Virus record (IMG/VR): IMGVR_UViG_3300033153_007973
Coordinates: 1 to 64,000 of that record
Strand: one strand, 5' to 3'
DNA length: 64,000 bases
Shown: positions 608-62,278 of the stretch, in pieces
How positions within the stretch are numbered: position 1 is the first letter of the stretch
How the letters are laid out: each line of letters starts with the position of its first letter
Position numbers and translations under genes: made by a program
The notes under the pieces: model-generated
What the model was told of the DNA's origin: nothing
Databases searched by the model: none
What the model saw: the letters and a program-made list of their open reading frames with translations, nothing else

Positions 608-3600
608 TTACTTCGACGTATCCGACATCACCATTGTGTTGCTTCTTGAAGCCATTTGAAGGAAGAGACTTACAATGCTCCCGTCATCACCTTGAGCCGC
701 TGCTCGATGGAGACTTATAACTCCTCCGCTCATTATGGAATGAGCAACTGGTGTTGTCCTTGCGCATATTACGCTGACGCCGGACTGCCACTTACCACCT
801 TTAAACATGCTTTCGACCACCTTCTGCGCGGTCTCTGGCAGGCGCACGAGCTTTGAGAGCTCGTCCTGCAGTTCCTGTCTTGGGACTGCTTCCAGTGACC
901 TTAGCATATTTGTTACTATATCTAGAGTAGCCTTTTGCCCTTCACTATTCTTACTGTTTAGAGCAGGCTGTGCGAGTGAATGGTAGAGATCATTTGCATA
1001 TGTAATCCCTACTCTACCATGATCTTGCACCATGATATTTCGCATGATATTACCAATGTTACCGGCATTTGCAGCACCTTCTTTCATAAATCTGAACTCG
1101 GCTGCTGCAGCTGCCTGACCTTTAACTATGTGCTCAATGCTGACTCTTCCCTTCATATACCTGTTGAAGTCAGCATTTTTCTCTTTGCTATATCTGTCGC
1201 GGATATCTCTCCAGTTTTCGCTGGTACCAGTGGACATTGAAAACCGAAAGTCTACTTTCCGCTTCATGAGATTTTCGCGGGGAGAGATTTTGAGCCCCTT
1301 TAAGGCTTTGGAACAAGAAAGCATGTTGAAATACTTGGCGATCCAGATTTTGCTCAAGTCTGCTTTTGCCTTTGCTCCTAATGGAGCATATGCAATCATT
1401 GTATCGCCATCAAAGTCACCATCGAAAACAGTAACTAATGCTGGATTGAAGCGAATTGTGTTTCCCTTCCATACTAGCATTCTCATGCCTGCTACGTTGT
1501 TTACCTGATGTGCCGGATTTCGGCTGATTAGGCATCTTGCCTTTTGGCGTTTCAGGATAGAATTAATGGATCCTGTTGTTAGGTCCATCCAGTCATCTTC
1601 CGGAATCATATAGGATTTTCGGAAATCGGCAGATGCACACCATTTCTTAAATAGCCGAATTGGAATCTCGCATGTTGTCATGTCTAGTTGTGGATTACCC
1701 GATATTACTGCATGGCAGCTTCTGATAACTCTTGGAAATGCCAGCATTCGGATTATACCTGTCTTCCTGAACAGACGCTTTGCGATACCATTCATTACCA
1801 TGTTGAACATTTGATTTGAGCGAGTTATCATACTTCGCTCTATCCATGGATTGTCATATCCTCCAGCTTTGTGCTTTTCGAAGTTCTGGAAGTATACGAG
1901 CAATGTGTTCAATGCGTTCTGAACATCCGAAACTGTGAAACTTCCATTATTGAGCATATGGGCTTTTAGCGTTTTCGGTACTCTGATGTACATTTCGCCA
2001 TCCGAGCACACATATACATCTTCGGTTTTCACTTTATCTCGGCCCATTCGTGCATTTCGCTCAAATTGGGTTGGGTCATATGATGGTACATTTATCGATC
2101 TTGCGAATGCACCTAAAATTAACTTCATGTCTTTTGGAACTCGAACATAGCCATTTGACTTTAGAAGCCGTGGATCTAGAACTGTTCTCTCACGTAGTTC
2201 TGATTCCACGATATCAGTTTCAGCTGTAAGTGCTGTTCGGTCGATTGCTGTATCGATCACAATCCCATCCATTTGCGATTTCGGCACCAAGAAGCCATTT
2301 CTGGATTTCTTAATAAATCCGCCTTCTAGTGTAAATCCGAAACATTGCATATGATCGATTGTCGCCTCTTCCGCTTGCGTTTTGCGTACTTCGAGGACTA
2401 TCTCTTTTATGAGCTCATCCGCATTAACAGAGTATAAGCTAAACATAACATCAGCAAGAGTATACATACCTTTACCGCGGGGAGCGACTCCTCTATAGTC
2501 CATTAGGACATCCCTGCTGGCCTTAGCCTTTGATTCGGCATGTTGTTCAAGTCGAAAGTATCTAACCCAACCATAGCCCACGTTTTCATACCAGCTACCA
2601 TTTGTCCAGTCTACAACTAGTGCTTCTCGAGGTAGTTTAACTTCTTTGAGTTTCTTCGTAGCATCTTTGAATGAAATGTCATTTGCCAAAAGGGGCATTT
2701 TGCCTTGTGTTGTCTTTCGGGCATATATGCTATACATTTCTTCAAGAATTCGACTCGGACAGCACCTTTTTCCGACATATGGTGGAACGATGATATCTAC
2801 TGGTTGATCATTTATCTTTGGCATATCTTTTCTTGGCAGGATTTTTGCCACAATAACCTTGTTGCCATGATGATCTGCCAGTTTGTCACCGATTGATAAT
2901 CTTAAGGGATAACTCGATTCAACTTGTATATACTTTACGTTTTCATCGGAGTCGTCTCCATTCTCGATTCTTATGTCCGTCACGATAGCTGTTCTCTGTA
3001 GAGATGATCGCATAGGTCCGGCTTTGCATTTCCCGAGGTGTCCTCTGTTTACATATGCATCTAGAGTGTTCACCGCGGAGCGGAACTTCTGGATCATCTC
3101 TGCAGGATTGATTCGCAGAGGTTGTACCGCCAATTCTGCATCTCTGGCTTTGAAGATATCATAGTGTTTGACAATTGTTATGAATTCTTCAGATGCTTCT
3201 TTCGAAATGACACAGCCATCTTCATGAGTATATCCATAATACTCCATTCTTGCTGCCAGAAGATTTCGACCATGGGGTCGGAATTCTGGCTCATCATTCA
3301 TGTCTGCTTCTGGATTTAACATGAGAGGAGGCTCATCGTAGAGTAACTCACATGCTTGTGTTGTATATCTGGCCACGACTTGTCTGTTCGGCGAGATATG
3401 TCGATGAAATGGGTTGTGAGCAAAGATCCAGCTTACTGGGTACTTACCATATGCAATGACATCTCCATCGCTAGTGATTTTGGTTCCCAAACTCAGGTGT
3501 ACTATCTCACCTGCTTTTCCGCTCTGTTGGGTATCACTCATGACAAGATATTCGTTATTGTAAATCTTTTCTGGAGCTCCAAATGGAAGCACAACCTTGC

Positions 3601-4234
3601 CTGCTACATCTCTAGCTTTTAGACGGCTAGGAATATACTCCATTCTGAGCGAGTTTTCGTTGGATACTATTCTTTGAAGCATACCCTGACTGATATTCTC
3701 ACATGCAAACTGATACAGCTTGGAGACTACTTTCTCGTATATCAGGGTATTCTTCCTTACGAGGCGCCATCGGGCAGCATTGTAGCACGATGGTAACGTA
3801 GTTGCGATAACTTTCTTGAATTCACTGAAGTTCAGATACCTGCTCTCTGGTATCCATCCGAAGGTTTGTTTAAACCTGGCTAATTCAGCATCACTGAATA
3901 CCGCACGTTGCAGTATTCTCTCGGTAGCTGTTCCATCGAACGTAGAAGCACGATGATGCTCATGTGGAATATGAAGCATCTTCTTTTCCCAGTTGTACTT
4001 AAGAAATTGTGTAATGGATACTTCTTGGTCATGTGTGATGCATACTGGTGATAACATTACATAATACGGTGGGATCATTCGGTCGTAGTCACGTGCCACG
4101 ACTCTCGCCTTCTTCTCTCCGCGCTTGGTGTTCGCAGTGATGTCGATTTTCATTTCGCCATCTTCGAATAATACACTTAGTTGCGCAGAAGCTCCCGTGG
4201 CGAATTCAACGTGCAGGTCGTTGAAACTCGTCAT
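608..4234 (-). CDS. Single-chain DNA-directed RNA polymerase (fused, minimal beta + beta' like)
   Basis: Beta motifs in order: PFHRH..NRQVVA..TQA, GRNL..YYGYTHEDGCVIS, IGDKLADHHGNKVIVAKILPRKDMP..VDII, YFRLEQHAESK. Then beta' motifs: KTGIIR..PRVIRSCHAVIS, LISRNPAH, catalytic FDGDFDGDTM. Confidence 0.93.
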   Translation of the reverse strand: MTSFNDLHVEFATGASAQLSVLFEDGEMKIDITANTKRGEKKARVVARDYDRMIPPYYVMLSPVCITHDQEVSITQFLKYNWEKKMLHIPHEHHRASTFDGTATERILQRAVFSDAELARFKQTFGWIPESRYLNFSEFKKVIATTLPSCYNAARWRLVRKNTLIYEKVVSKLYQFACENISQGMLQRIVSNENSLRMEYIPSRLKARDVAGKVVLPFGAPEKIYNNEYLVMSDTQQSGKAGEIVHLSLGTKITSDGDVIAYGKYPVSWIFAHNPFHRHISPNRQVVARYTTQACELLYDEPPLMLNPEADMNDEPEFRPHGRNLLAARMEYYGYTHEDGCVISKEASEEFITIVKHYDIFKARDAELAVQPLRINPAEMIQKFRSAVNTLDAYVNRGHLGKCKAGPMRSSLQRTAIVTDIRIENGDDSDENVKYIQVESSYPLRLSIGDKLADHHGNKVIVAKILPRKDMPKINDQPVDIIVPPYVGKRCCPSRILEEMYSIYARKTTQGKMPLLANDISFKDATKKLKEVKLPREALVVDWTNGSWYENVGYGWVRYFRLEQHAESKAKASRDVLMDYRGVAPRGKGMYTLADVMFSLYSVNADELIKEIVLEVRKTQAEEATIDHMQCFGFTLEGGFIKKSRNGFLVPKSQMDGIVIDTAIDRTALTAETDIVESELRERTVLDPRLLKSNGYVRVPKDMKLILGAFARSINVPSYDPTQFERNARMGRDKVKTEDVYVCSDGEMYIRVPKTLKAHMLNNGSFTVSDVQNALNTLLVYFQNFEKHKAGGYDNPWIERSMITRSNQMFNMVMNGIAKRLFRKTGIIRMLAFPRVIRSCHAVISGNPQLDMTTCEIPIRLFKKWCASADFRKSYMIPEDDWMDLTTGSINSILKRQKARCLISRNPAHQVNNVAGMRMLVWKGNTIRFNPALVTVFDGDFDGDTMIAYAPLGAKAKADLSKIWIAKYFNMLSCSKALKGLKISPRENLMKRKVDFRFSMSTGTSENWRDIRDRYSKEKNADFNRYMKGRVSIEHIVKGQAAAAAEFRFMKEGAANAGNIGNIMRNIMVQDHGRVGITYANDLYHSLAQPALNSKNSEGQKATLDIVTNMLRSLEAVPRQELQDELSKLVRLPETAQKVVESMFKGGKWQSGVSVICARTTPVAHSIMSGGVISLHRAAAQGDDGSIVSLFLQMASRSNTMVMSDTSK

Positions 4235-47624: not shown

Positions 47625-48585
47625 GATTTTTCTCCTTGTTATGGGTTAGTGTTGAATGTTGTCATGATTCATTCTTGTATGCAATACCGAGTCCCACGAA
47701 CATGATAAGGTCGAGAGCAATACAGGTAAATATATACCATTCAGTAGGACTCATACCTCTATCTTCCTTTCGATCATGTGGTCATAAATCATGCCCGTTA
47801 CGATTTCCATATCATCATCATCGCTCACGGGCAGTTTGATTCCATCGATCATGATATATCCTCTTCGTGCTTCGAAGATAGTGATCTCTTTGAATTTGAC
47901 CATAAGAGATTCCATAGCTTGAAGGGGTCCTGTGCGTTTACGATCTTGTTCCTTTCCTTCCAGTCGAGCCACGAGGGTTCGAAGACTATCTGTCATCGAG
48001 GCACGCAGGAACATAGATATAATAGCTTGGCGAAACTCTTCAACAGATTTAAAGTCCATAAACGTAAGAGAGCGACTCGATTCACATTCGTCTTTACCAG
48101 AGCATTCATCACAGTTCATTTGGAGTTCCTCCTTTTCTTTTGGTTAGTGGGCATCATTCCATCTGTCTCAGATAGAAACTTGCCCATCTCTTCCTTGATT
48201 TCGCGGGCCACTTCTGCACCTTGCTTCATTGACAGTTCAAGCATTTTTATGATGTGCTCCCGTTTCTCCACTGTTGCTATTCGGTCGAGCAGCTGTTCTA
48301 TTATGAATGCGAGCATTACTGGATCTTTATCCTTGATCTTTCTATATATAGACGCTACGACCTTGGTTCTGGGAGCTGGATACTTGATCATGCCTGTTTT
48401 GTGTGCTTCTGACGTAGCTGTAGGGTCTCCTACAAGAGCTTCCTCAGCTTCCTTGGCTCTTTGTTTATAGATCTCAGATGTAGATACAAAGATGCTCTTA
48501 ATGAGCTTTCTCATGTCTTTTTCTGGGATGCCAGTGGCTTTACATACATCAGGTTCTTTGAGATTTATTCTCATAAAGATGTCTC

Positions 48586-49935: not shown

Positions 49936-50151
49936 TTAAGCATGGTCATTCTCCTTATATGGATCAAATAATTCATCCACTGATTTGATTCGACTCTTCC
50001 AGTGACATATTATAAACTTTTGATCATAGTTTAGGTATCCTCCAGCATGAGGACATATATTAACACACCATATGGATCCTATGTATACTAGATGGTCTAT
50101 GTCAATTGGATGATGTGAACATGTTCCTTTCGTTTCTACTTTCGTGTCCAT
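49936..50151 (-). CDS. Small Cys-rich protein with DELFDP tag
   Basis: CSHH..IGSIWCVNIC; ends SVDELFDPYKENDHA. Confidence 0.6.
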   Translation of the reverse strand: MDTKVETKGTCSHHPIDIDHLVYIGSIWCVNICPHAGGYLNYDQKFIICHWKSRIKSVDELFDPYKENDHA

Positions 50152-50624
50152 ATAGTTACATTGTTGTGTTTCTCCATGGGTTTCAGGCATGGTCTGACTT
50201 CCTGAGGGGTTAGCCCTCCATATCCAATACCAGGATAGTTTAGATGATACTGTTGTTTGGGATTGTCTTGTGCTATTTTGGTTAAGCACTCAGTAGAGTA
50301 TTTAATAAGTTCTAGTGTTGATGGCTGCTTATAGTGCGTCTTGGTCTGGAAGATGCCAGCATCACCACGTCGTGATGTGCTGTCCCATTCTTTATCATTG
50401 TCTATTGGTTGTAGTATTAATGTTCCATAGATCCCCATGGAACCACACGATTCTCGTATGGTCTTACCAGCTACTTCTGGTAGCCACCAGAATGTGTTAC
50501 GGGCTTGGAGCGCTGCACCTGCGCCCATAACAAGACAACCATTAGCAAGCACGATGGAGTTTGTGGTAACGATAATGATCTCGTTTTCTGGTACATAGAA
50601 CATGTTACCCTTTCTAAAGTTCAT
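50136..50624 (-). CDS. Macro-domain-like (ADP-ribose binding/processing) protein
   Basis: KGNMF, VTTN...G.LVMGAGAA, FQTK.H, PGIGYGGL. Confidence 0.75.
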   Translation of the reverse strand: MNFRKGNMFYVPENEIIIVTTNSIVLANGCLVMGAGAALQARNTFWWLPEVAGKTIRESCGSMGIYGTLILQPIDNDKEWDSTSRRGDAGIFQTKTHYKQPSTLELIKYSTECLTKIAQDNPKQQYHLNYPGIGYGGLTPQEVRPCLKPMEKHNNVTIWTRK

Positions 50625-51580
50625 ATTTATTCTCCTCGTTTTGTATAATGCTAAAATTCGTGATATTTCCATCTTGTCTCTCTAGTGTCCATAAGAAGTG
50701 TCCTCGAGATATCCGAGTTTTGTGATCCCATCTAAGTGCAGCTAGAGGCCTGAGTCTGTGTTTTTTGTTTGTGATGGATCGTGCTTCAATATAGATATCA
50801 ACAATGGTTGCTGGTCTTTTGAAGATGTGGTTGTCATCGATATCACGTGAGCCCACTTTAACATAGAGCTCATTGCACATACACATGACTCGATCACCAG
50901 CTTGCCAACCTGTATCGTTGGTGTGGTAGTCTTTCATGTGATTTCGTATCCTGTGACAGCTTCACCTACGACAACTGAATTTCCAATCCAGAATGTCATT
51001 GGCCGATCGTTTCTGCCAGATCGAATAAGCTCTTTAAAGCACTCGAGCTCTTCAGGGCTGTAACACACGGCACATGCGGTAAATGCGCCGTTGTCCACGA
51101 GTACCATGAGACGTTCTCCTCCGCTGAATTCTGCGGTGATGAAGTCACTCATCTTAATCTGCATGGCATTCTTCTCGAGCCATTCTTCTTTGGTCATGTT
51201 CTTCGGATTGATGTAATCTCCCATGTTATTCCTCCGTTATATTAAAATATCCTGTGAGCCAAGAAGCTGGCTTCGACACTTGCTGAGTAGTACTCCGATA
51301 CGCAAATCTCTTCTCCCATTCCTATCATGGATACTAAGGTGTAGGGGATTATTGCGTGACTCACACTCGGGATGGTTCGGCGAGGACACGATAATCAAGC
51401 TGTGTATCAAATCTCAATAAGCTCCACCTCTTCTCAACTCACAAGATATTGTATACAATAAAATGAGACGCTGAACCATACTCACATATTAGTAGACAAT
51501 GAGTCCTCACAAGCACTCTCGCCATAGAGGTGGATGGGTCAACGCCTCTGATCTTATGTGTATATAGCTTTGCCGGATTC

Positions 51581-51883
51581 CTAATCGGTTACCGGTCGAG
51601 GTGCGCCGATTCCCTTACTTATATTAAGATATTCTGCTATCACGTGACCGTGGCAAGCTTTTGGTGAACAGTAACATACGATATGTTTCCCTCGTAGTTC
51701 TGATACTGCCTTAAAGAATGTAGTATCATTGCGCATTCTTTCATGAAAGTGTTTCTCGAACTTCTCGATAACTTGTGTTCTGTCTCCATCCTTACCTATT
51801 ACGTAGGGATTACCATAGGGAGAACCACGGCCGATATATACGTCTCCAGGTTTCTTGTCCTTAATGTGACCTACAGTTGTCAT
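51581..51883 (-). CDS. DUF4326 protein
   Basis: DVYIGRGSPYGNPY, ELRGK...CYCSPKACHGHVI. Confidence 0.85.
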   Translation of the reverse strand: MTTVGHIKDKKPGDVYIGRGSPYGNPYVIGKDGDRTQVIEKFEKHFHERMRNDTTFFKAVSELRGKHIVCYCSPKACHGHVIAEYLNISKGIGAPRPVTD

Positions 51884-52149
51884 GATTTCTCCCGATGTGG
51901 ATCGAATATCTCATCCATTGTAGGTTGAGGTAGTGCTGGTATGTGTTGTGTTCTCTTGGCTTCAGGATAGTGACAGTAAACTAAACCTGTGATGCTGATG
52001 TCGGTTGCGCGAATTACTTCCTTACCGTCGAAGCACTTACAGGTTTGACATCTTATCGAGCTTACTCTACATGGTTGGTGATGTGGGCATGGTGGATTAG
52101 TTATACTTGATGTACCATATACTTGCACTGTATATCTATGTGTATGCAT
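51880..52149 (-). CDS. Small Cys-rich protein with DEIFDP tag
   Basis: CPHH..RVSSIRCQTC; ends QPTMDEIFDPHREKS. Confidence 0.65.
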   Translation of the reverse strand: MHTHRYTVQVYGTSSITNPPCPHHQPCRVSSIRCQTCKCFDGKEVIRATDISITGLVYCHYPEAKRTQHIPALPQPTMDEIFDPHREKS

Positions 52150-52960
52150 ATTTCTCCCTACGTAGGCAGATCATTCCTTATTCGTTCATTGGTGATCTTA
52201 TTAGTACCTGGCTCACGATCATATTCATACCATATGCCAGGCTCACCGTCTGCTGATTTGCGTACTTCCTGTTCACTGTTGGCGAATGAGAGTATGGTGG
52301 CATCATCTGTAGTTCCGCACTTTGCGCGTTCGTCGTAAAGAATATAGTATTTCTTCATGATTCATCCTCATTTTTGATCTTGGATAGAGACTTGCGTGCT
52401 CTGTCCACGAATCTTTCTTGGACATTGTCAGCACGAATTTCTTCTGCTTCTGCTCGGTTCTTGTCCTCGAGGTGGCGGACTTCGTCGCCACCACCCTTGA
52501 TGTCGGATTCATTACAGTATTCCACGAAGCGATCGAAGCAACGCTTACATCTCTGAAGATGATTACCTATGGATTGAATTCTGCTCTGTGACATAGTAAT
52601 TAATCCACAGAGCTCATCGTCAGTAGGGTGTCCAGATATATCTTTGATGGGTAACATTGTTCCTCCTCTGGTAAGTAAGAGACACGAGCCGACATCCTCC
52701 GGGATATGCTCCCTTCGCCAGATTTGCATCTGGATCAGCTCATGTCTCAATTATTTACATGTGAGCTTATAAAGAAGGCACGATGTTGCTTCACGTCAGC
52801 GGGCATCTCCGGCCCAACAAGTTCTTGAGGCAGCGCGCTCATCTCTGAGTGAAGGACGGACATCGTGCCATGTTGCCATTATTTATGCGAGACATTAAAA
52901 AGAAGACACGAGCGTCATTTACAGACACTCGTGTCTATTGGATTCAGTCAGGAGGAAGTT

Positions 52961-53575
52961 TTACATCGCGATATCGTCACCTTTCGCAGATGCTTTCTTT
53001 CCGTTCTTGGTTTCGACTGTGGGTGCACCTTGTGTACCGATCTCGAAGAGCTCGGACAGTTTCGTCATGTCCTTGGCGCCCTTCTTTGGCTCGAAGATGT
53101 GACCATAGTCGAAGTTCTTTGTCTCGTTTCCGACGAGCTTTCTGCCGTCGAAAGTGTGACCCTTCTCGCCCAGGTCTCGAAGGACATTCTCAGTGGCCTG
53201 CATGAACAGGGCTGACACACTGGCATTCGAAGAGAAAGCTGCATCTTTCGGCAGTTCTTTCGGACGTCGGTTGATGGGGACCAAATCGTTTTGATCCGTC
53301 ATCGAGCCGAGAATTCGAACTTGGGTTTGTCCCTTGTTCTGTCCTTTGGAGAATGTGACCTGCCCGAGTGCCAGCCGATAATAGGCACCCATGACTTTCT
53401 GGCCGGAGATTTCGGCGCTGATCCCGACCGCAATAATGGCCCGGAGGATTCCGCCTCCGACGGGATAAATACGCAGGTCCTTGATCTTTGCCCCGAACTG
53501 CTTGAGAACATCGTAAGGGCTTACATCCTGTGATGTGGTGGTACGCTTCGTGAATTTCATTGTGGTATCAGACAT
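52961..53575 (-). CDS. Putative single-stranded DNA-binding / abundant early protein
   Basis: Strong SD, optimised-looking codons, acidic-hydrophobic tail GDDIAM; SSB identity is inference. Confidence 0.4.
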   Translation of the reverse strand: MSDTTMKFTKRTTTSQDVSPYDVLKQFGAKIKDLRIYPVGGGILRAIIAVGISAEISGQKVMGAYYRLALGQVTFSKGQNKGQTQVRILGSMTDQNDLVPINRRPKELPKDAAFSSNASVSALFMQATENVLRDLGEKGHTFDGRKLVGNETKNFDYGHIFEPKKGAKDMTKLSELFEIGTQGAPTVETKNGKKASAKGDDIAM

Positions 53576-54288
53576 TTAACTAGACCTCCTTAAGGTCGTT
53601 GAGGGATATGAACTGAGTGGCTCCTGACCGAGTCTCATAAAAGATGCGAACTCTCAGTTGAACATGATAATGGTTACTTCTTCTTTCTGATCTCAAGGTC
53701 TTGCTTGATAGGCCAGACCTTGAGAAGCCAGGGCTCGGTAAAGATATACGTAGCGAAGATAGCAGAACCCATAAAGTTGGAGAATCCGGCCACCATACCA
53801 CTACCGATAAACTCGACAATGCCCATGGATAATCCCCAGTTCACACATATAGCGATGAACTTATGCTGCATTATCGCTTTGCGGACCGGGATATACCATC
53901 TGATGAACTTAACCTCGAATGGAAGCGCTCTATATACGCTGATACTTATGAACGCTACACCGAGGGATAAACAAACGGCGAAAGTCATAAACATACTCAT
54001 AGAATGCCTCCTTTCAAATGAGATGCGAAATCATGGTATTAATTATACATACCATTCCTTTTATTGCACTGTATTCTTTTCTGCTCTTCGCGTAGCCATT
54101 TTGTCCATTTCGGGATAACATATATGAATACGACGATAGCTCCCGCCACATGGCACAAACCTATAAAGATACGGATATTGCTGTTCCCGGCAATGAAATA
54201 CCTTAATGCGAAGAACACATTGGCGATTATGACTACGTATCCTGCCATAATCATTCTTTTTACGTTCGTTATGTTTAATTCCATAATA

Positions 54289-54597
54289 TTACTCCTTAAT
54301 CTTCCAGATGGGGGCAGATACATGTCCCGTCGAGACTGTCCGTCCCGTGTCCTCGAATACACCAGTGGCATATGCCACACGTGCAACAGCCTTATTCTCA
54401 CTCCAGTTCTTGATAATGACCTCATTTTCGGCCAACACCGACTCAGGAATATTCACAGTCAGCGTAGCAAAGGGTTCGCCATCATCATTCTTGATAAGGA
54501 TAGTAATGCGATCACCCTGTAAGTAATGAGAGGTCTCGAAGTGTACTTTCTCGCCGAACAATTGGAACGTAATATTCTTAAGAGTAGTTAGGTTCAT
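54289..54597 (-). CDS. DUF4313-like protein
   Basis: GEPFATLTVNI, IKNWSEN, TGRTVSTG. Confidence 0.65.
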   Translation of the reverse strand: MNLTTLKNITFQLFGEKVHFETSHYLQGDRITILIKNDDGEPFATLTVNIPESVLAENEVIIKNWSENKAVARVAYATGVFEDTGRTVSTGHVSAPIWKIKE

Positions 54598-56920
54598 AGT
54601 ATTACCTCCTCCAGAATGTAAGTAGGATAGAATAAAAGGGCCCAGTCAATCTAAGTATGTTGCATACATATCCCGAGACTGAGCCCCAGCTAGCTTTATC
54701 TTTGATACTCCAGAGGGTACACGGAGTAGGGTATGAGTATTGAATGAATCCAATAATAATGCGAAGCTATCATATGAATAGAGGCATTGTATGCTATCTA
54801 TACAGGGTGACAATAAGGTGTATGTTATAGGGTATGAGAGTGTAGTGATTCCAAAACACCCGAGTCATACCGTATTTATACGGGTAAGTATTACGAGGTT
54901 AGACGAGCTATAGCGCTGGTATATGCTTGGTGAGCATATTATGCGTATAGCATGTTAATCTCGAGTCATGAATCGACCTTGACGGCTATTCATACGTGCT
55001 CGATTTTCATTAGAGCACTGTTATTGCGTGCTCGCTCTGCTCGCACTTGGTGCTACTATATAGTTAGAGAGAGCGATAGTGTTCTGTTTTTGTATAAGTA
55101 GAGGGTTGCGCGCGGCGTCCCGCCGCGCGTTTACGACGTAGTTAGGTGTGGGAAAAAGAGAGCGCGAACACCTGTTGTGGTGCCCGCGCGCTTCTTAGGG
55201 TGATTGTGGTTCAGTCAGTGGTTTGAGATCGACTGGCTGTTCCGGTTCTGGTGATGCTTTGTCTTCTTCGGGAGGTGTCAGGTCAACGTTCTTCTCGTTG
55301 GATTGTCTGACTTTGCCGATGATGGCGATGCCGGCGATGGCTGCAACTCCCAGGATACCAAGTCCGATCAGGATCTTCTTCATGACTTGTTCTCCTTAAT
55401 GCCGAGTTTCTTCGAGGCGTCGATTGCCCCGGTGACTCCGGCTTTGATGATGATGGAGCAGTCTTTCACGGCGAGTTTGGTCATTTTAATGGCGGGTTTG
55501 GACGCTTCTTTCACGCCTTTCAGCCCTTCATTAAAACAGCTTTTGAGCTCTTTCAGATACTTGAGAATATTCATATATGTACCTCCTTAGAAGAATATCT
55601 TGATTGCCTCTATTGCATAATAGAGACATCCCAACAGGAATGCGATACTTGGGAGTATGATGAATGACAGCACAACCAAGCCGGCAATTCCGAGGACGAG
55701 CTTGAGCAGGACTTTGTTTATGAACCATTCGAGCATGTCCCATTTGTCAGCGATGACCATACCGCTCCAGATTCTCATTTGTGATACCTCCATTAGCTAA
55801 AGATTCTGCTGAGGAGATCGCCGATTAGTGCGAACCACCCAATGCAGAGTTGGGTTAATATGAACATGCCATCTTTGAGTGCTGGAAATATCATAGAGCA
55901 CAGCTTGAGAACAGGTACTGCAATGATCAGTATTATACCGATTAGTATACCTTTCATATGAGTACCTCCTAGAGTATGATTGCATGGCAGTGTGGCATGA
56001 AGATGGGGCTACTAACCCAGCCACCACTGAGATATCTCCCAGTGCCTGCGCAGGACCGCCATTATAAATGCGAAATCCATCTGATAAAAAGAAGCCACGA
56101 ACTATAGGCTGTAGTCCGTGGCTATGAGCAGGAGGAGGGTGCATATGTGTTACGCGGAGTTAAGGAAGGATGGAGAGTGGGCCAAAGGCGCATACCCTCC
56201 ATTATAAATGCGAAATCACTCATACTCAGCCGATAGCCACAGCGGTTCGATGCTCTGTTTGTCTAAGTTGTTTCGAACCTGCGTGATTGCATCCTGTTTA
56301 TCGGCTCCTGTTACCATCTGGTAATCATGGATATTCTTGCCGTCCTTGTCATGGTACAGGTAACTCACTCGGAATTGGCGCATATTATCCCCTCCTTTAT
56401 AATAGGATACTGGACGTAGAATTAAACGCCCAGCTCCAGCTGATTTGTGTGTGGTTTGAATTTCACACAGGTTATCTCGCCCACTACTATTTCTTTATAG
56501 TGGACTCGGGTCTCAATGGGAGTCACCCAACCCATTTTCCGGATCATCTGCATTGTGATGTTCCGGGTTGCGCTCTGACGCGTGGTTGCCAGAGTCTGGA
56601 ATTTGTATGAGGTCGAGCCCCAACGGGCGGTGGCCTCATACACAAGACGATTGAATTTGGATGTCATGATAAGCCTCCTTGATAGATTTTGGGGTTCGAT
56701 CTCGTTCCATTAATAATGCGAAAGCTATGAAATCGGCATACAGCACTAAAGCCATTATACATACGAAGGTCATATAGAAGACTATTGCTATCATGTTATA
56801 GGGCTGTCGGGTTCCTAGGACAAGCATTTTGGCATGCGTGACGCACCATAGCGCAGTAGTTATGTGACGATCCAATTACCTATGAACGGAGGCGGTGTGA
56901 GCCACCCCCGCTCGACCAGC

Positions 56921-59659
56921 TTAATCTTTCACGTGCTGGTTACGCTTGATCAGATGGTGTGTACCTGCCGCCCGATCAGATATGATACTCAATGTCCCAG
57001 GAGTCAGATTCAAGCGCTTCTCTTCACGCTCGAGGTCTGACTGGATAGCACCCAGGATCTTTTCGTTCTCTTCCTCCTTTCTAACGTCGACCGTAGCCAG
57101 CCAATATAGCCAGCTACGATCAATCACCCGCCTAGCACATGCCAGGACACGCGGGTCGAATCCTGACAGACCACCATACAGCCCCTTGTTATTGCTGCTG
57201 GTGTAACTGATGATACAGATCATGATCATAACCTGCATCTCCTCCAAGGCCACACCGAACTCCTTGGAGAACACGTGAGCTCCAGTATGGAACAACGCAG
57301 CCACTTTCTGCTGACTTGTTTCCATATTGGCATGTGCTCTCTTATCGGACTGCCAAATATCCATAGCCCGACAAATCATGGAGCGATACTTCTCGCGCAT
57401 CACTCCATCGGTGTACATCACTTTCTCCGATAGCTGCTTACCATCCTTGGTGGGTAGAGCAGCCTGTCGACCAGTGATTGGATTGATCCCGATCCGCTCT
57501 GCAACCTTATGCATAATAGGATCAGTCTTCACCATCTCACGTGCCTTGTTATGAATATGGTTCTCAGGTGTTCCGAGTTTCATATCAACTAGAGGCTCGA
57601 AGATCGCCCGCAGGAACGGATCTGAGCGATCGATGCGATGGTGATTACCAGCGATGGACATGAGCTTATCCATATCCACCTCACCAGTGTTAGCGTTAAC
57701 ACAACCAAGCTCATCCAGACCTCCGATGAGTTGCTCCCTGTTTGTATCAACAACCACAATCGTCCGACCGCCTTTCTGCTTGCGATTGAACGACTCGGAA
57801 GCGATCATATGTAACAGTGACCGCGGCCGAAGTGTGAATTTGGGATCGATCTTCTTAGCTGCATCAGTAAACGCGAAGACTGATGCTTTATAATCGATCT
57901 TCCGGACGGAGTGCTTAATTCCATCCAGAAAGCTCTGCAGGAAATGTAGTTTCATCCCCCGCAGGAAATACTGGACATCGTCTCTATAGAAGATGCCCAG
58001 ACGCAGGAATCCCTCTTGGAACCTGCGAAACAGCTGAGTTGCCCGCCCAATCATGAGCGAGTCGAACCCATATCCAGTTGTTGCTACCTGAATCAGCATA
58101 TCAGCAACTGGCTTAGTCACCTTGCATACTTTGCGAAGGTGTCCAACATCATTATTCTCATCCTCATGTACAACCTCAGGAGGACAGATCTCATCCTCGG
58201 GACGCCATGCTAGATTTCTAACGAGCCCGAAGACTTCATCAGGGTACACAACCACGATATCACCATCGAAGTCACCACCCAACTGCCCCATCAGGATAGG
58301 ATTCACCCTGATGCTGTCTCCCTCGAACCCCACCACCTTCACAGTAACGACGGTGTCAGGGAACACAGGATGCCTGGCGATGATGATCTTATCACCAAGC
58401 TCGAAGCCCTTGCCCTTGAAACATGTGGGCAGGATCACATTAAGCGCCCCGATGAGATGTTCAGGTACTGAGTATGAGAAGCGCCCAGCCGTAACTCCGC
58501 GAGTGATCAACCCACGGATTAACGGATAGATCATGCTCCGTGCTTTCTCGAGCATAGATCCAAACTGGGTGCTATCTACTTCACGTAACGCATCCATCAC
58601 TCCCTGTAGAGTGGCAGAGAATTTGCGATGGTCTTCTCCTTCCTCAGGTGCAACACCACGTGACATGACGTACCGTGCCAGGTGGTGATCACCAGTAGAC
58701 ACCGCAGCTGCAAACTCAGTAGCTCTTGTTTTGAGCCAGGTGAGTGGTTTATCCATATCCATCCATCTGGCCTTTGTCAGGAGACTCAAAGATCCGCGAG
58801 CTCCCTTATTCTTCAGATATGCATCCCCAGACTTATGGAGATAGATATCCATGAACAGGGTTCCCAATTCCCCATCCCAGCTGCCTATACCAATAACCTT
58901 CATGGTATCGACAGCTATCTTCATCTCTTTGTCAACATAACGGGAAGTTAACGCACACCCATCCATATTGATAGAGTTGGGTAGTACATAGAACTCTACC
59001 CCCATCAGTACCCCACTCTGCAGAGGTGTGTTACAATACTTGCCTAACTTGAACAGCTTCTGCCCAAGTAGGTTCTTCAGTGTGTCCGGAGTTACGAACA
59101 CAACGCCCCGCTCTGCCATTGCTAGCAGTGGGTCTATCATCTTCACATCTACGTGCTTGGAGACATGTTCTAATATCCAACGCCTCATGTACTTGTGTGA
59201 ACGCCGCTGGATAACACCCTTGAAGATCACAAGTACCTTCAATGATATCCCCAATACCTTCTTAATGGCACTGGAGACCGAACAGTTGATCGTAGCCATG
59301 AGCGGGGCCTGCCCGAACTCAGGTACGACACGCATCTTACCGGGGAACATGTGACGCCTGTTCTCCTTCAGATGTGTCACCATCCCTCCAATGCTCTCCA
59401 GTGCATCATCACACTGAAGACCAAGGAAGCCTTCTCTTGCTTGCACAAAGGCACCACCACATGCCTTCAGTACACGGGCCAGGATACTATCCTGAACCGA
59501 GACGGTGAGCTCCGACCCCTCGATCGGAATGTCCACTACAGGGTAGAGCCGGTCGCCCGACACCTCATCCTGTACTGGGTGTGCCACCATCCATGCCCCG
59601 AAGAACCTCTTCTTCAGGGAGGACAGTGCACCATCCAAGACACTGTTTATCTTGTTCAT
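56921..59659 (-). CDS. Second single-subunit double-barrel RNA polymerase (YonO / cellular RdRP-like)
   Basis: NMDGCALTS; IIIARHPVFP...SIRVNPILMGQLGGDFDGDIVVVY; FLDGIKH; AGGAGG SD. Confidence 0.8.
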   Translation of the reverse strand: MNKINSVLDGALSSLKKRFFGAWMVAHPVQDEVSGDRLYPVVDIPIEGSELTVSVQDSILARVLKACGGAFVQAREGFLGLQCDDALESIGGMVTHLKENRRHMFPGKMRVVPEFGQAPLMATINCSVSSAIKKVLGISLKVLVIFKGVIQRRSHKYMRRWILEHVSKHVDVKMIDPLLAMAERGVVFVTPDTLKNLLGQKLFKLGKYCNTPLQSGVLMGVEFYVLPNSINMDGCALTSRYVDKEMKIAVDTMKVIGIGSWDGELGTLFMDIYLHKSGDAYLKNKGARGSLSLLTKARWMDMDKPLTWLKTRATEFAAAVSTGDHHLARYVMSRGVAPEEGEDHRKFSATLQGVMDALREVDSTQFGSMLEKARSMIYPLIRGLITRGVTAGRFSYSVPEHLIGALNVILPTCFKGKGFELGDKIIIARHPVFPDTVVTVKVVGFEGDSIRVNPILMGQLGGDFDGDIVVVYPDEVFGLVRNLAWRPEDEICPPEVVHEDENNDVGHLRKVCKVTKPVADMLIQVATTGYGFDSLMIGRATQLFRRFQEGFLRLGIFYRDDVQYFLRGMKLHFLQSFLDGIKHSVRKIDYKASVFAFTDAAKKIDPKFTLRPRSLLHMIASESFNRKQKGGRTIVVVDTNREQLIGGLDELGCVNANTGEVDMDKLMSIAGNHHRIDRSDPFLRAIFEPLVDMKLGTPENHIHNKAREMVKTDPIMHKVAERIGINPITGRQAALPTKDGKQLSEKVMYTDGVMREKYRSMICRAMDIWQSDKRAHANMETSQQKVAALFHTGAHVFSKEFGVALEEMQVMIMICIISYTSSNNKGLYGGLSGFDPRVLACARRVIDRSWLYWLATVDVRKEEENEKILGAIQSDLEREEKRLNLTPGTLSIISDRAAGTHHLIKRNQHVKD

Positions 59660-59936
59660 AGCCTACCTCCTGCTTATTCTTTACTCACCTGTCCTCAATG
59701 AACAGGCGTCATATCCTTCTATCTCCCACTATCCCATGTTGTTGTCTACTAGTCGCTAAACCTAAAGGTCTTCATCTCACCCTTCGGCCCAGCGAGGATG
59801 TACATGCGTGCATACTTGAGGTACACGCATATCCATCCTGCGTCGATTAGCCTGTTGATCTCGAGCCATGTTGTGCTAGTCATGACTTGCCTCCTGTTGT
59901 GTTACTCACCCTCCTATACAGGTGGGTGTACTACAT

Positions 59937-59997
59937 TGGCCCATGTGGGGACTCGAACCCCAATGCACATACCACGTGCACCTGCCTAGCATGGGCC
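59937..59997 (-). ncRNA. D-armless tRNA-like RNA
   Basis: GGCCCATG/CATGGGCC-A acceptor; TGCAC-GTGGTAT-GTGCA; TGGGG-TTCGAGT-CCCCA. Confidence 0.6.
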
Positions 59998-60013
59998 ACC
60001 TCCTACTGCCAGG

Positions 60014-60220
60014 CTACTTGATGAACTTGTAGCCTGACATGTTACGGATCTTCTGTTCGGTACATGGCATACATATGTACCGATCATTGATCAGCTTGGC
60101 ATATGACATCTTCATGATGTCCATGCCGGTGGTCATGTCCACCTTTGACACAACCTTCGAACAACAACCACATGTGCGTACCCGTACTATCTTGCCCTTC
60201 TCTTTGATCATGTGTTCCAT
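60014..60220 (-). CDS. Small Zn-binding hypothetical protein
   Basis: CGCC..CMPC; AGGAGG SD. Confidence 0.6.
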   Translation of the reverse strand: MEHMIKEKGKIVRVRTCGCCSKVVSKVDMTTGMDIMKMSYAKLINDRYICMPCTEQKIRNMSGYKFIK

Positions 60221-60522: not shown

Positions 60523-60698
60523 GTGCTTGACCTTTAGTTGAAGTGGATAGAGGCATGGGAGCATGCTTCTGAGGACTTCATAGTCTGAAGATGGAGGGTA
60601 CCGTAGATTACGGCCGTAATCGCGGGAGAGTAGATCCAGACTGCACAGCCACCCTTGTTGCTCTAATGGTCATGCAATATATTCCGGGAGGGGATATT

Positions 60699-61079
60699 AT
60701 GCCAATAACAGAAGCAAATATATACTTTAATGTGTCGGGTTATCCTATTAACAGTACATCTATACATCCTGGAGATGGACGCCCTATTATAGAATACGTC
60801 AAGGAAAGCTACAATGTGTCCTTTCCTGTGTCAGGTGGACCACATGCTGATTGCGGATATGATATGTGGGAGGTAGACATCTCATGCCCTTACTGTGGTA
60901 ATCATTTCAAGACATGTCGGAGAACTGACATAAATGCACCACGTATAACATGTCATAAGTGTAGGAATAATTTCGATGTATATAATGATATGATCAGAGA
61001 AGAACTGGCCAAGCAGAATGGAGAAAACGCGGACCCTTCTATAGTAGAGGTAATCAAAGATGGAATCATCACAGTGTAA
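60699..61079 (+). CDS. Zn-ribbon protein with C-terminal VIKDGIIT tag
   Basis: CPYC..CHKC; GGAGGGG SD before 60699. Confidence 0.7.
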   Translation: MPITEANIYFNVSGYPINSTSIHPGDGRPIIEYVKESYNVSFPVSGGPHADCGYDMWEVDISCPYCGNHFKTCRRTDINAPRITCHKCRNNFDVYNDMIREELAKQNGENADPSIVEVIKDGIITV

Positions 61080-61356
61080 ACATCCAGGGGATGGTTTTTA
61101 TATTGTCAGGAGAGTATCGAGATACTCTAAGGAGGATGGATATATTATAATACTGGGGTGTCCTCATTGTGGTAAGGAATTGCAGATGACGGGATATAAA
61201 GATCAGCGTATTATACGTACAGTATGTGTTGAGTGCAACGAACCGATCATGATATACAGGAACATGGTACAAGCAACGATACACAGACAACGCGGAGAAA
61301 CACTCTCGCCAGACAGTGTGAATGTAGTCAGGAAGGGACTTATTAGTGATTCTTAG
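61060..61356 (+). CDS. Zn-ribbon protein with VVRKGLIS tag
   Basis: CPHC..CVEC. Confidence 0.7.
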   Translation: MESSQCKHPGDGFYIVRRVSRYSKEDGYIIILGCPHCGKELQMTGYKDQRIIRTVCVECNEPIMIYRNMVQATIHRQRGETLSPDSVNVVRKGLISDS

Positions 61357-61669
61357 AGCAATACCACCTATTATACATGGTAAGAGGGTAGTTACCAATG
61401 ACATGGCTTTGCTTGTTCTCAGGTGTGATAACTGCGGGGCAGAATTCACTGTATATCATGAAACAAAGACACAAGACGAGGTTAAATGTGATGTATGTTC
61501 GGATACAGTAGTAGTTATGCCCAGACTAATGGAAGCAGCATGGGATAAGGAGAGGGGGCTGTGGGGTGAGCCGGAAGATGTACGAGTTCTAAAAACCGGT
61601 TTGATCCCTTTAGGTGAGTTAAAGGTGCAGAAGTGCCGCGAATTTATAGATCTTGTGAGGAGATCATAA
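61346..61669 (+). CDS. Zn-ribbon protein with VLKTGLIP tag
   Basis: CDNC..CDVC. Confidence 0.7.
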   Translation: MILRAIPPIIHGKRVVTNDMALLVLRCDNCGAEFTVYHETKTQDEVKCDVCSDTVVVMPRLMEAAWDKERGLWGEPEDVRVLKTGLIPLGELKVQKCREFIDLVRRS

Positions 61670-61977
61670 TGGCTATAACTATAGAGGAATATCGAGCATG
61701 GTTGGATGCAAATAATCAACATGTGAATATCGGTTCTGATCATTCACATATAGACCGGAGTATCATGAGTAACGATGCGGAGATTACTATTCCCGCTAGG
61801 ACCGTGATTGTTCCCCAGGTAGATATGGTGATGGGTGATGAGAATCAGATCATCTTTGAGTGCACGGACGGAATGGTAGTGATCTTTAATAAAAAAGATC
61901 TGAATGGTGTCTTCCCGGTGGTGGACCCCTCAAAATCCGAAATGGTGCGGTCTGGGTTGATCCCTAGTGGCGAATAA
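61669..61977 (+). CDS. Hypothetical protein with MVRSGLIP tag
   Basis: Start ATG overlaps the previous TAA; GAGGAG SD. Confidence 0.7.
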   Translation: MAITIEEYRAWLDANNQHVNIGSDHSHIDRSIMSNDAEITIPARTVIVPQVDMVMGDENQIIFECTDGMVVIFNKKDLNGVFPVVDPSKSEMVRSGLIPSGE

Positions 61978-62278
61978 TGACTATTTTGATGAGTTGATCC
62001 AGAGGACTAGAGATATGGGCAATGGACCTTCATTTATTGTTAAACATGCTAGAGCCGCCGATGATGCTGTTAATGTCGAGGTCATATGTCCACATTGTAG
62101 TAAGATTCAATATGATATGATCGTCAGAGGGATTGATGTTGGAAGATGCTGTATGCATTGCATGAGTTCAGCTACTATTAGAGCAAAGGATGTGGAACAC
62201 GCCATCAATGATTTGTTAGAACAAGATAAGCCCATGAATATGAGTGTGTTGCGTGATGGGCTTATACCGGAGGAATAA
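61967..62278 (+). CDS. Zn-ribbon protein with VLRDGLIP tag
   Basis: CPHC..CMHC. Confidence 0.7.
   Translation: MANNDYFDELIQRTRDMGNGPSFIVKHARAADDAVNVEVICPHCSKIQYDMIVRGIDVGRCCMHCMSSATIRAKDVEHAINDLLEQDKPMNMSVLRDGLIPEE

What the first reader, a model, noticed from the sequence alone, without database searches (positions are those of the whole stretch)
56921..59659. A second, unrelated DFDGD polymerase in the putative early region
Seen: a 912-aa protein with ARHP...NP..MGQLGGDFDGD and DGCALTS but none of the cellular-like beta motifs of the first RNAP. It lies near the strand switch among widely spaced genes. Inference: a transcription cascade using two different single-chain double-barrel RNAPs (early/middle vs late) in one phage.
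Basis: partly seen in the sequence, partly recalled or inferred. Interest (0 to 1): 0.65.

Follow-up and report, generated by a model that had tools for sequence, protein, structure and literature searches.

The report
Orphan two-barrel RNA polymerase, jumbo phage
A 234-kb uncultured phage carries, at the head of its early gene arm, a 912-residue protein with the catalytic signature of cellular-type RNA polymerases but almost no known relatives. It is probably one of three such polymerases in this phage, and a conserved DNA motif just downstream looks like its own promoter.

Summary
The ORF is real: 56921-59659 on the minus strand, 912 aa, with a strong Shine-Dalgarno site. It carries R429-H-P431, then D463-F-D-G-D467 34 residues later, and M-D233-G-C-A-L-T-S upstream.

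Sequence and profile searches place residues about 383-475 in the beta'-type double-psi barrel of two-barrel RNA polymerases. The best matches are plant Pol V, bacterial beta', P23-45 gp64 nvRNAP, the window's own fused beta-beta' RNAP and the YonO family.

The second, beta-like barrel rests on motifs only. Two AlphaFold runs failed (pLDDT 42 and 38). The family has five sequences in about 15 billion proteins, two of them pieces of one gene.

- A third DFDGD protein of 2274 aa lies in the structural arm, outside the window, and is a candidate virion RNAP.
- A 16-nt motif, TTCGCATTTATAATGG, occurs seven times on the gene's strand in the 8.6 kb downstream (48,298-56,767). One copy also lies 134-224 nt past the stop codon in each of three distant relatives. 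This is a candidate cognate promoter.
- The gene sits where gp64 and yonO sit in their phages, just inside a divergent strand switch.

Verdict: a new, very rare family of single-chain two-barrel RNAP. Polymerase activity and the cascade are untested.

The parts
56921..59659 (-). Gene for the 912-aa polymerase-like protein (P0001)
   Evidence: Open frame, ATG start, stop at 56921-56923. Four relatives found by exhaustive HMMER, representing three genes.
59666..59671 (-). Shine-Dalgarno AGGAGG, 6 nt before the ATG
   Evidence: Read directly from the sequence.
58235..58513 (-). DPBB-A, the beta'-like barrel, aa about 383-475. Both halves lie next to each other with no insert.
   Evidence: phmmer against plant Pol V largest subunit, aa 389-475, E 0.016. 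Profile against PDB: 8f72 (gp64 nvRNAP), then beta' chains. hhalign to gp64: probability 75%, E 2.7e-5. hhalign to a YonO-family profile: 100 columns, E 1.6e-3. Alignment A5.
58367..58375 (-). R429-H430-P431, equivalent to Rpb1 R446-x-P448
   Evidence: Lies 34 aa before D463, against 33 in yeast Rpb1 (PMC2919709). P431 is invariant in the family and in A5.
58259..58273 (-). D463-F-D-G-D467, the metal-binding loop
   Evidence: D463, D465, G466 and D467 are invariant in the family and in alignment A5 with RNAP1, the 2274-aa protein and gp64.
58778..59023 (-). Candidate DPBB-B, the beta-like barrel, aa about 213-294 (motif level only)
   Evidence: Invariant D233-G234 in MDGCALTS resembles YonO TDGCGMM, gp64 GDGIVG and Thermus beta FEDAI. 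K254 in KVIGIG is kept in the three members that cover it. A candidate K285-G286 follows a variable loop in which P0004 has a 56-aa insert. No profile or fold support.
59036..59089 (-). Predicted helix, aa 191-208, with invariant K195, K201 and K204. Candidate duplex-binding helix ahead of DPBB-B.
   Evidence: Invariant columns of A3. Helix in the AF2 secondary structure. A helix occupies this position in solved two-barrel RNAPs (PMC10770324 Suppl. Fig. 8). Inference.
56752..56767 (-). Motif copy 1 (2 mismatches), 154 nt past the polymerase stop codon
56707..56722 (-). Motif copy 2 (2 mismatches), 40 nt before the ATG of the 81-aa ORF 56422-56667
56199..56214 (-). Motif copy 3, exact TTCGCATTTATAATGG
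56059..56074 (-). Motif copy 4, exact, directly after a terminator-like hairpin
56093..56123 (-). Intrinsic-terminator-like hairpin with a T run, just upstream of motif copy 4
   Evidence: A similar hairpin tail precedes copy 6 (family D8).
54750..54765 (-). Motif copy 5 (3 mismatches)
52876..52891 (-). Motif copy 6 (3 mismatches), also just after a terminator-like tail
48298..48313 (-). Motif copy 7 (3 mismatches). The weakest copy; it may be chance.
59749..60220 (-). Small upstream ORFs on the same strand (68 aa with CxxC pairs at 60014-60220; 44 aa at 59749-59883). They flank a tRNA-like element.
608..4234 (-). The 'first RNAP': a 1208-aa fused beta-beta' protein, listed for comparison
   Evidence: Pfam RNA_pol_Rpb2_6 at 1.6e-19 and RNA_pol_Rpb1_2 at 8.4e-11. 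It is the only beta-type barrel detectable in the genome.

Best explanation
The gene encodes a very divergent single-chain two-barrel ('double-psi beta-barrel') RNA polymerase of a new, rare family. It is a non-virion enzyme made early in infection. Proposed layout, from N to C terminus: an N-terminal domain; a lysine-rich helix (aa 191-208); a minimal beta-like barrel that supplies D233 and one or two lysines; a helical connector; a compact beta'-like barrel that supplies R429 and the D463/D465/D467 metal site; and a long helical C-terminal part. Proposed role: the first genes of the minus-strand arm, this one among them, are read by an injected virion RNAP or by the host enzyme. The new polymerase then starts at TTCGCATTTATAATGG-type promoters and expresses the cluster of small genes between 48 and 57 kb. 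The fused beta-beta' RNAP at 608-4234 would serve other gene classes. Shown here: the ORF, the DPBB-A homology, the rarity of the family, the gene's conserved position, and the conserved motif downstream. Inferred: the second barrel, polymerase activity, DNA-dependent promoter-specific transcription, the motif as this enzyme's promoter, and the order of the cascade.
For: (1) The catalytic signature is complete on the beta' side: R-x-P lies 34 aa before DFDGD, against R446/P448/D479 in Rpb1 (PMC2919709). (2) Every database match falls on RNAP barrels. These are Pol V NRPE1 at E 0.016; the family profile against PDB, with P23-45 gp64 nvRNAP (8f72) first and about 18 beta'/gamma chains after it (8f72 is cited in PMC10770324 and its sequence matches gp64); hhalign to gp64 at 75%, E 2.7e-5; the window's RNAP1 at E 1e-3; a 5-member YonO profile at E 1.6e-3; one relative against PF00623 at E 0.005; and rpoC models weakly. 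(3) A greedy hhalign against the YonO family is collinear from the M-D-G-C motif to beyond DFDGD, and it puts MDGCA on TDGCG. D233-G234 is invariant and K254 is kept in all three members that cover it. (4) Protein-language-model features: 24 of the 30 nearest Atlas clusters are phage 'RdRP' PF05183 clusters, score 0.91. This is a lead only. (5) No other beta-like barrel exists in the genome to pair with it. (6) Position: it is the third or fourth gene inside a divergent strand switch, after tiny genes. Relatives L017 and L018 are arranged the same way, as are gp64 in P23-45 and yonO in SPbeta. (7) The motif gives 8 hits in the window against 0.61 expected; 7 are on the gene's strand within 48.3-56.8 kb. 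The only hit in each relative locus lies on the same strand 134-224 nt after the stop codon. By shuffling, each has a probability of about 0.007, or about 3e-7 jointly. Two copies directly follow terminator-like hairpins.
Against: No fold evidence: AlphaFold2 gave pLDDT 42 for the full length and 38 for the core. Foldseek and VIA-align matches on those models were uninformative. The N-terminal barrel has no profile support against gp64, RNAP1 or PDB. The second invariant lysine of the beta barrel is not evident in P0001. Where gp64 has W-K-G and YonO W-V-K-G, P0001 reads W-D262-G. K285-G286 is only a candidate. One relative (P0003) has G in place of the R of R-x-P, and DGDGD. P0001 does not reach any curated family threshold. 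The motif contains TATAAT and could serve a host sigma factor. In two copies it abuts a ribosome site, leaving almost no leader. No expression data could be obtained.
Confidence: 0.6

Rival explanations
1. It is a beta'-like protein with a single barrel. Either it needs a partner that supplies the second barrel, or it is a catalytically dead derivative with a structural or regulatory role in transcription.
For: Only DPBB-A is supported by profiles. No canonical K-G is seen after K254 in P0001. P0003 has lost the R of R-x-P.
Against: No separate beta-like gene is detectable in the complete 234-kb genome apart from the already fused RNAP1. D233-G234, K254 and three lysines just upstream are conserved at 20-27% overall identity. 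The DxDGD triad is kept in all members.
Confidence: 0.15
2. It is a two-barrel polymerase but not a promoter-specific transcriptase. It could be an RNA-templated or primer-extending enzyme like QDE-1 and the eukaryotic RdRPs, used for example in RNA amplification, priming or counter-defence.
For: Atlas feature neighbours are annotated RdRP / PF05183. Like the RdRP/YonO group, it has M-D-G with no glutamate before the aspartate (PMC2919709).
Against: The characterised phage members of this group, YonO and gp64, are DNA-dependent RNAPs (PMC5467207; PMC10770324). The barrel sequence is closer to beta' and fused beta-beta' than to PF05183, which gives no hit. The gene's position and the conserved downstream motif fit a transcription role.
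Confidence: 0.1
3. The polymerase is real, but the TTCGCATTTATAATGG motif is not its promoter. The motif would be read by the host RNAP, by the putative virion RNAP or by the fused beta-beta' RNAP, or it acts at the RNA level.
For: The motif contains a perfect TATAAT. Two copies overlap a ribosome site. No experiment links the motif to the enzyme.
Against: No -35-like element lies at sigma-70 spacing. The TCGCAT core is conserved next to the polymerase gene in four phages whose proteins are only 21-38% identical. That pattern is more easily explained by a co-inherited specificity. The relatives' contigs are too short to show whether they also carry the other two RNAPs.
Confidence: 0.3
4. It is a PolD-like two-barrel DNA polymerase or a primase.
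For: PolD shares the two-barrel core (PMC10770324).
Against: No match to PolD chains in PDB searches. The phage has its own family B DNA polymerase and a DnaG-DnaB primase-helicase.
Confidence: 0.03

Closest known systems
Thermus phage P23-45 gp64 non-virion RNAP (PDB 8F72)
   Same: A single chain with D-[FY]-D-G-D. It is the best PDB profile match and gives hhalign 75% over 71 columns. Its gene lies a few kb inside a divergent strand switch after small genes. Its phage also carries a virion RNAP inside a giant structural protein on the other arm (PMC10770324).
   Different: gp64 has 616 aa against 912. No detectable similarity outside DPBB-A. The gp64 promoter motif is described as GC-rich, whereas the motif here is AT-rich with a TCGCAT core. 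gp64 has a clear W-K-G in barrel B.
Bacillus prophage SPbeta YonO and relatives (annotated 'RdRP', PF05183-like)
   Same: Single chain of about 830-920 aa. The D-G-C motif in barrel B has no preceding glutamate. The profile alignment runs collinear through both motifs. yonO also heads an arm beside a strand switch. Both families include genes split by intervening genes.
   Different: Similarity is weak: probability 16%, E 1.6e-3. The single YonO sequence gives nothing. PF05183 does not hit. The P0001 barrel A reads like beta' (E-G-D-S-I-R-V-N-P ... DFDGD), whereas YonO has DNDGD.
Fused beta-beta' single-chain RNAPs of phages and mobile elements (the window's 608-4234 protein; P0006)
   Same: The DPBB-A sequences are closest here. 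P0006 has I-R-R-H-P ... M-L-D-G-D-F-D-G-D. The order is the same, beta part before beta' part.
   Different: Those proteins keep Pfam-recognisable Rpb2_6 with H-G-N-K and Rpb1_2. P0001 has neither. The spacing between the barrels is about 180-230 aa in P0001 against about 485 aa.
crAss-like phage phi14:2 gp66 virion RNAP (PDB 6VR4)
   Same: Member of the same superfamily. The precedent of an RNAP embedded in a giant virion protein fits this phage's 2274-aa protein rather than P0001.
   Different: No sequence match to P0001 or to the 2274-aa protein.

Membership tests
Two-barrel (DPBB) RNA polymerase superfamily | DxDxD metal-binding loop in barrel A (Rpb1 D479/D481/D483) | tested here: met
   D463-F-D465-G-D467. 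Invariant in the family and in A5.
Two-barrel (DPBB) RNA polymerase superfamily | Invariant R-x-P about 33-45 aa before the loop (Rpb1 R446/P448; QDE-1 R962/P964) | tested here: met
   R429-H-P431, 34 aa upstream. P is invariant. R is present in 3 of 4 members; P0003 has G.
Two-barrel (DPBB) RNA polymerase superfamily | Sequence or profile homology of barrel A to known RNAPs | tested here: met
   All matches fall on RNAP barrels. Individual E-values are modest, from 2.7e-5 to 0.1.
Two-barrel (DPBB) RNA polymerase superfamily | Barrel B aspartate (Rpb2 D837; QDE-1 D709) | tested here: inconclusive
   The invariant D233 sits in an M-D-G-C context like YonO T-D-G-C-G. The two are aligned only in a greedy low-probability hhalign.
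Two-barrel (DPBB) RNA polymerase superfamily | Two basic residues of barrel B (Rpb2 K979/K987; QDE-1 R738/K743) | tested here: inconclusive
   K254 is conserved. The second basic residue is not fixed: W-D262-G at the expected spot, with K285-G286 as an alternative after a variable loop.
Two-barrel (DPBB) RNA polymerase superfamily | Two double-psi beta-barrels facing each other in the structure | tested here: inconclusive
   AlphaFold2 gave pLDDT 42 and 38 because only 5 sequences exist. Fold searches were uninformative.
Two-barrel (DPBB) RNA polymerase superfamily | Templated RNA synthesis | not testable with these tools
   Needs biochemistry.
YonO / RdRP (Pfam PF05183) | Match to the PF05183 model | tested here: not met
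   No hit for the protein or in a six-frame search of the genome at E up to 10. In the same search the B. subtilis control gave a sub-threshold hit.
YonO / RdRP (Pfam PF05183) | Profile similarity to the YonO family across both barrels | tested here: inconclusive
   hhalign E 1.6e-3, probability 16%. 100 confident-range columns on barrel A; collinear extension to barrel B only with greedy settings.
P23-45 gp64-type nvRNAP | Similarity beyond barrel A (barrel B loops shared by gp64 and gp96) | tested here: not met
   hhalign of the N-terminal profile against gp64: probability 0.3%.
Cellular-type or fused beta-beta' RNAP | Pfam RNA_pol_Rpb2_6 and RNA_pol_Rpb1_2 above threshold | tested here: not met
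   None for P0001. PF00562 and PF00623 hit only the 608-4234 gene in the genome. One relative reaches PF00623 at E 0.005, below the cut-off.

The most novel reading that the evidence does not exclude
This uncultured 234-kb phage runs a largely host-independent, three-stage transcription programme with three evolutionarily distinct two-barrel RNAPs. The first is a virion enzyme embedded in a 2274-aa structural protein. The second is the orphan 912-aa early enzyme described here, with its own TTCGCATTTATAATGG promoter class. The third is a fused beta-beta' enzyme. The 912-aa family would be a new deep branch of two-barrel polymerases with an atypical barrel B, bridging cellular-type beta' barrels and the minimal YonO/gp64-type architecture.
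Probability: 0.3. Interest if true: 0.8.

Novelty: new variant of a known kind. Interest (0 to 1): 0.62.

Why it matters
Single-chain two-barrel RNAPs such as YonO, gp64, gp66 and QDE-1 are central to arguments about how cellular RNA polymerase arose, and few families have been characterised. This would be a further family, invisible to all curated profiles, whose barrel A looks cellular while its architecture is minimal. It comes with a ready-made testable promoter candidate, which YonO long lacked. It also sits in a genome that appears to hold three different two-barrel RNAPs, more than the two-polymerase systems described for phiKZ-like phages and P23-45. If the enzyme is active, it offers a compact orthogonal polymerase-promoter pair.

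Tried and rejected
Structure and fold searches:
- AlphaFold2 on the full length with the 5-sequence alignment A1 gave pLDDT 42. On the core, aa 185-620 (A4), it gave pLDDT 38. Both models are unusable.
QDE-1 and aspartate decarboxylase, a DPBB fold, appear only at E about 1. I do not count this as evidence.
- VIA-align wide search returned only generic helical bundles on aa 499-608.

Family and relative searches:
- Pfam, PHROGs and NCBIfam on P0001: nothing.
- Word-index protein searches with P0001, A1 and P0003 returned only the query.
- tblastn against 50,697 phage records: nothing.
- IMG/VR scans with P0001, P0003 and A2: nothing.
- The genome-contig scan found nothing. The metagenome scan found only the contig of P0002.

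Barrel B and YonO:
- A PDB profile search and hhalign against gp64 and RNAP1 with the N-terminal profile A3: nothing.
- hhalign against the single YonO sequence: nothing.

The 2274-aa protein:
- Pfam, PHROGs, NCBIfam, PDB phmmer, phage tblastn and the Atlas all returned nothing. Its assignment rests on three ordered beta'-like motifs.

Promoters and reads:
- A genome-wide k-mer search for a general promoter motif found only tRNA T-loops and ribosome sites.
- ATATGATCA turned out to be coding or repeat sequence.

Wasted calls: 18 (wrong reference) and 86 (length limit).
Full report
**1. The observation**

The window is the first 64 kb of a 234,008-bp IMG/VR virus record. CheckV rates the record complete. 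The terminal repeat is only 114 bp, so the ends are probably an assembly overlap of a circular or permuted map.

The ORF 56921-59659 on the minus strand is open for 912 codons. It starts at an ATG 6 nt after an AGGAGG site.

No Pfam, PHROGs or NCBIfam model matches it. The 1208-aa protein at 608-4234 is a recognisable fused beta-beta' RNAP, with Rpb2_6 at 1.6e-19 and Rpb1_2 at 8.4e-11.

**2. How rare the family is**

The word-index search of 5.8 billion clusters returned only the query. The exhaustive HMMER search of 1.84 billion representatives found five other proteins:
- P0003: 871 aa, 27% identity.
- P0004: 916 aa, 25% identity.
- P0002: a C-terminal piece, 38% identity.
- P0005: an N-terminal piece.
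- P0006: matches only around the DFDGD loop. It is a fused beta-beta' protein.

P0002 and P0005 come from one metagenome assembly and are two pieces of one gene. Scans of IMG/VR, JGI metagenomes and GTDB genomes with protein or profile patterns added nothing.

**3. Barrel A is well supported**

Ruprich-Robert and Thuriaux list eight residues invariant in all two-barrel polymerases: Rpb1 R446, P448, D479, D481 and D483, and Rpb2 D837, K979 and K987 (PMC2919709). P0001 has all five residues of the Rpb1 side, with R-to-D spacing of 34 against 33 in Rpb1.

Every database match falls on this barrel:
- phmmer against PDB aligns aa 389-475 with the Pol V largest subunit (E 0.016).
- The family profile ranks 8f72 first and then about 18 beta'/gamma chains, all on the same columns. 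8f72 is cited in the P23-45 paper, and its aligned sequence is that of gp64, the non-virion RNAP.
- hhalign to gp64 gives 75% probability, E 2.7e-5, over 71 columns.
- hhalign to the window's own RNAP1 gives E 1e-3.
- hhalign to a profile I built from five YonO-family proteins gives E 1.6e-3 over 100 columns. That alignment includes the first half of the barrel (T-A-G-R-F-S-Y-S-V-P against A-R-Y-T-Y-L-C-P-D).
- One relative reaches PF00623 at E 0.005.
- A joint alignment of the family, RNAP1, the 2274-aa protein and gp64 keeps P431, D463, D465, G466, D467 and a following G in every row.

No single score is strong, but they all agree. I take the beta'-type barrel as established.

**4. Barrel B is not established**

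Two AlphaFold2 runs gave pLDDT 42 and 38, as expected from five sequences. The fold searches on them were uninformative.

What remains is motif evidence.
- D233-G234 is invariant in all four members that cover it. Its context (M-D-G-C-A-L-T-S) resembles YonO T-D-G-C-G-M-M, gp64 G-D-G-I-V-G, the corresponding QDE-1 segment and Thermus beta F-E-D-A-I in the structure-based alignment of PMC10770324.
- As in YonO and the RdRPs, there is no glutamate before the aspartate.
- With greedy settings, hhalign to the YonO profile stays collinear from this motif to beyond DFDGD and puts MDGCA on TDGCG. The probability is low.
- K254 (K-V-I-G-I-G) is kept in the three members that cover it and could be the first basic residue.
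- The second basic residue is a problem. Where gp64 and YonO have W-K-G and W-V-K-G, P0001 reads W-D262-G, while P0003 and P0004 have K or R nearby.
- An alternative is K285-G286 (L-K-N-K-G-A-R-G-S-L-S-L-L, compare beta G-N-K-G-V). It follows a loop that is clearly variable, since P0004 has a 56-aa insert there.
- Three invariant lysines (K195, K201, K204) in a predicted helix just ahead of the barrel fit the duplex-binding helix of solved enzymes.
- Profile searches with the N-terminal part alone find nothing.
- No other beta-type barrel exists in the genome to serve as a partner.

**5. Context**

The genome has two arms that diverge at about 60.5 kb and converge at about 183 kb.

The plus arm starts with small zinc-ribbon paralogues and 20 tRNA genes. 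It then carries terminase, portal, protease and giant proteins.

The minus arm starts with tiny genes and then P0001, which begins about 0.85 kb from the switch. Next come about 9 kb of small genes, mostly of unknown function. Far downstream are the nucleotide-metabolism and replication genes and RNAP1.

Relatives L017 and L018 show the same 'switch, tiny genes, polymerase' order. So do gp64 in P23-45 and yonO in SPbeta. In P23-45 a virion RNAP fused to the tape-measure protein transcribes pre-early genes, including gp64, and gp64 then transcribes early and middle genes (PMC10770324).

**6. A third polymerase candidate**

Outside the window, at genome 113448-120272 (+), lies a 2274-aa protein between proteins of 2570 and 3795 aa. 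It carries G-R-T-T-I-S-P, N-R1547-K-P-T-L and G-D1602-F-D-G-D in beta' order. No database tool recognises it. Its place among giant structural-arm proteins recalls crAss-like gp66 and P23-45 gp96. I rate it a likely virion RNAP, at motif level only.

**7. A candidate promoter**

A repeat search near the gene found TTCGCATTTATAATGG. With up to 3 mismatches the window has 8 hits against 0.61 expected. Seven are on the minus strand between 48,298 and 56,767, the stretch directly downstream of P0001. The rest of the genome is at background level.

Two copies sit right after terminator-like hairpins (56093-56123 and the tail before 52891). One sits 40 nt before a gene start.

The only match (up to 4 mismatches) in each relative locus lies on the polymerase strand 134-224 nt after its stop codon: L017:8074, L018:5034 and L044:1919. 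Shuffling gives about 0.007 for each tail, or about 3e-7 jointly. The proteins are only 21-38% identical, yet the TCGCAT...T.T..TGG core persists. The simplest reading is a co-inherited polymerase-promoter pair.

The alternatives remain open: a host sigma factor, another phage RNAP, or an RNA element. No sigma-70-type -35 box lies at the right spacing.

**8. Comparison with known families**

The protein works most like gp64 and YonO: a single-chain, non-virion two-barrel RNAP placed at the head of an arm. It is not a member of either family by the tests available. PF05183 does not match and nothing beyond barrel A matches gp64. Its barrel A sequence is closest to the fused beta-beta' type, but it lacks that type's Rpb2_6 domain. 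It is best filed as a new family within the superfamily.

I found no report of a phage with three different two-barrel RNAPs in the papers I searched. That is a limited search.

**9. Limits**

There is no structure and no known host. The cascade is a proposal modelled on P23-45.

My confidences:
- P0001 carries a beta'-type RNAP barrel: 0.9.
- It is an active single-chain two-barrel polymerase: about 0.65.
- The motif is its own promoter: about 0.45.
- The phage uses three polymerases in sequence: about 0.3.

Noticed in passing
genome G000:C1:113448-120272 (+), outside the window (locus L003): A 2274-aa protein in the structural arm, between proteins of 2570 and 3795 aa. It carries three beta'-like barrel motifs in order (GRTTISP, NRKPTL, GDFDGD at aa 1602). 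It is a candidate virion RNAP and would be the third two-barrel polymerase in this phage. No database tool recognises it.
   Followed up: partly
window 59939-59996 (-): A tRNA-like element about 280 nt upstream of the polymerase gene. It has a 9-bp acceptor-like stem, an 8-bp hairpin, a T-arm with a UUCGAGU loop and a 3' CCAA, but no D-arm. Rfam mascRNA-menRNA scores 25.9 bits (E 0.07) and the fold z-score is -2.35. ARAGORN does not call it. It may be an RNase P/Z processing signal.
   Followed up: partly
window 5261-33341 (-) and genome 65,314-70,657 (+) (L045:5715-11058): The phage carries at least 31 tRNA genes. Eleven are scattered on the minus strand of the window. Twenty form an array near the start of the plus arm.
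   Followed up: partly
window 60591-62278 (+): Four or five tandem small paralogous genes, each encoding a CxxC...CxxC zinc ribbon and ending in a conserved G-L-I-(P/S) tail. They are the first genes of the plus arm, facing the polymerase arm.
   Followed up: no
L043 and L044 (GCA_004196275.1 contigs SDBV01068524 and SDBV01178678): In the closest relative the polymerase gene is in two pieces on two contigs. The pieces match P0001 aa 8-245 and 415-890, and the middle part is missing. A PIN / PhdYeFM toxin-antitoxin pair lies beside the N-terminal piece. Split yonO-type genes with intervening genes also occur in Clostridium phage c-st and several SPbeta-like phages, one with a GIY-YIG nuclease.
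   Followed up: partly
window 56921-59659 compared with genome 113448-120272: The codon composition differs sharply. The polymerase gene has GC 50.3% and GC3 56.5% (z about +2.3 against the phage's genes). The 2274-aa gene has GC3 27%. The genome mean is GC 42% and GC3 40%.
   Followed up: partly
window 52768-52783, 52896-52911, 56085-56100 (+ coordinates; elements on the - strand): A repeated terminator tail (TCGTGTCTTCTTTTTA on the minus strand). Two of the three copies lie directly upstream of a TTCGCATTTATAATGG-type motif, which suggests modular terminator-promoter junctions in the early region. Motif copy 3 (56199-56214) is followed about 75 nt later by the 56093-56123 hairpin, which could bound a very short transcript.
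   Followed up: partly
genome 193441-197193 (-) (L009): A 1249-aa SF2 helicase interrupted by an intein (Pfam Intein_splicing, aa 515-866).
   Followed up: no
genome 198796-200916 (-), 80654-82444 (+): The phage has an anaerobic ribonucleotide reductase NrdD (E 3e-182). Its terminase is closest to Moorella phage MTATph1 (32% identity) and to Bacillus jumbo phages, including 0305phi8-36, which the literature reports to encode a YonO-like RNAP. This hints at an anaerobic Firmicute host.
   Followed up: partly
genome 161,817-166,404 and 162153-163835 (+): Five copies of TATGATCACGA(TG) lie in and around large tail-region genes. A protein there has an Mtd_N (major tropism determinant) domain and another has Laminin_G_3, which may point to a diversity-generating or repeat-bearing receptor-binding module.
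   Followed up: no
window 36001-38000: A local composition anomaly: GC 0.494 and GC skew -0.279, against about 0.42 and -0.05 elsewhere.
   Followed up: no
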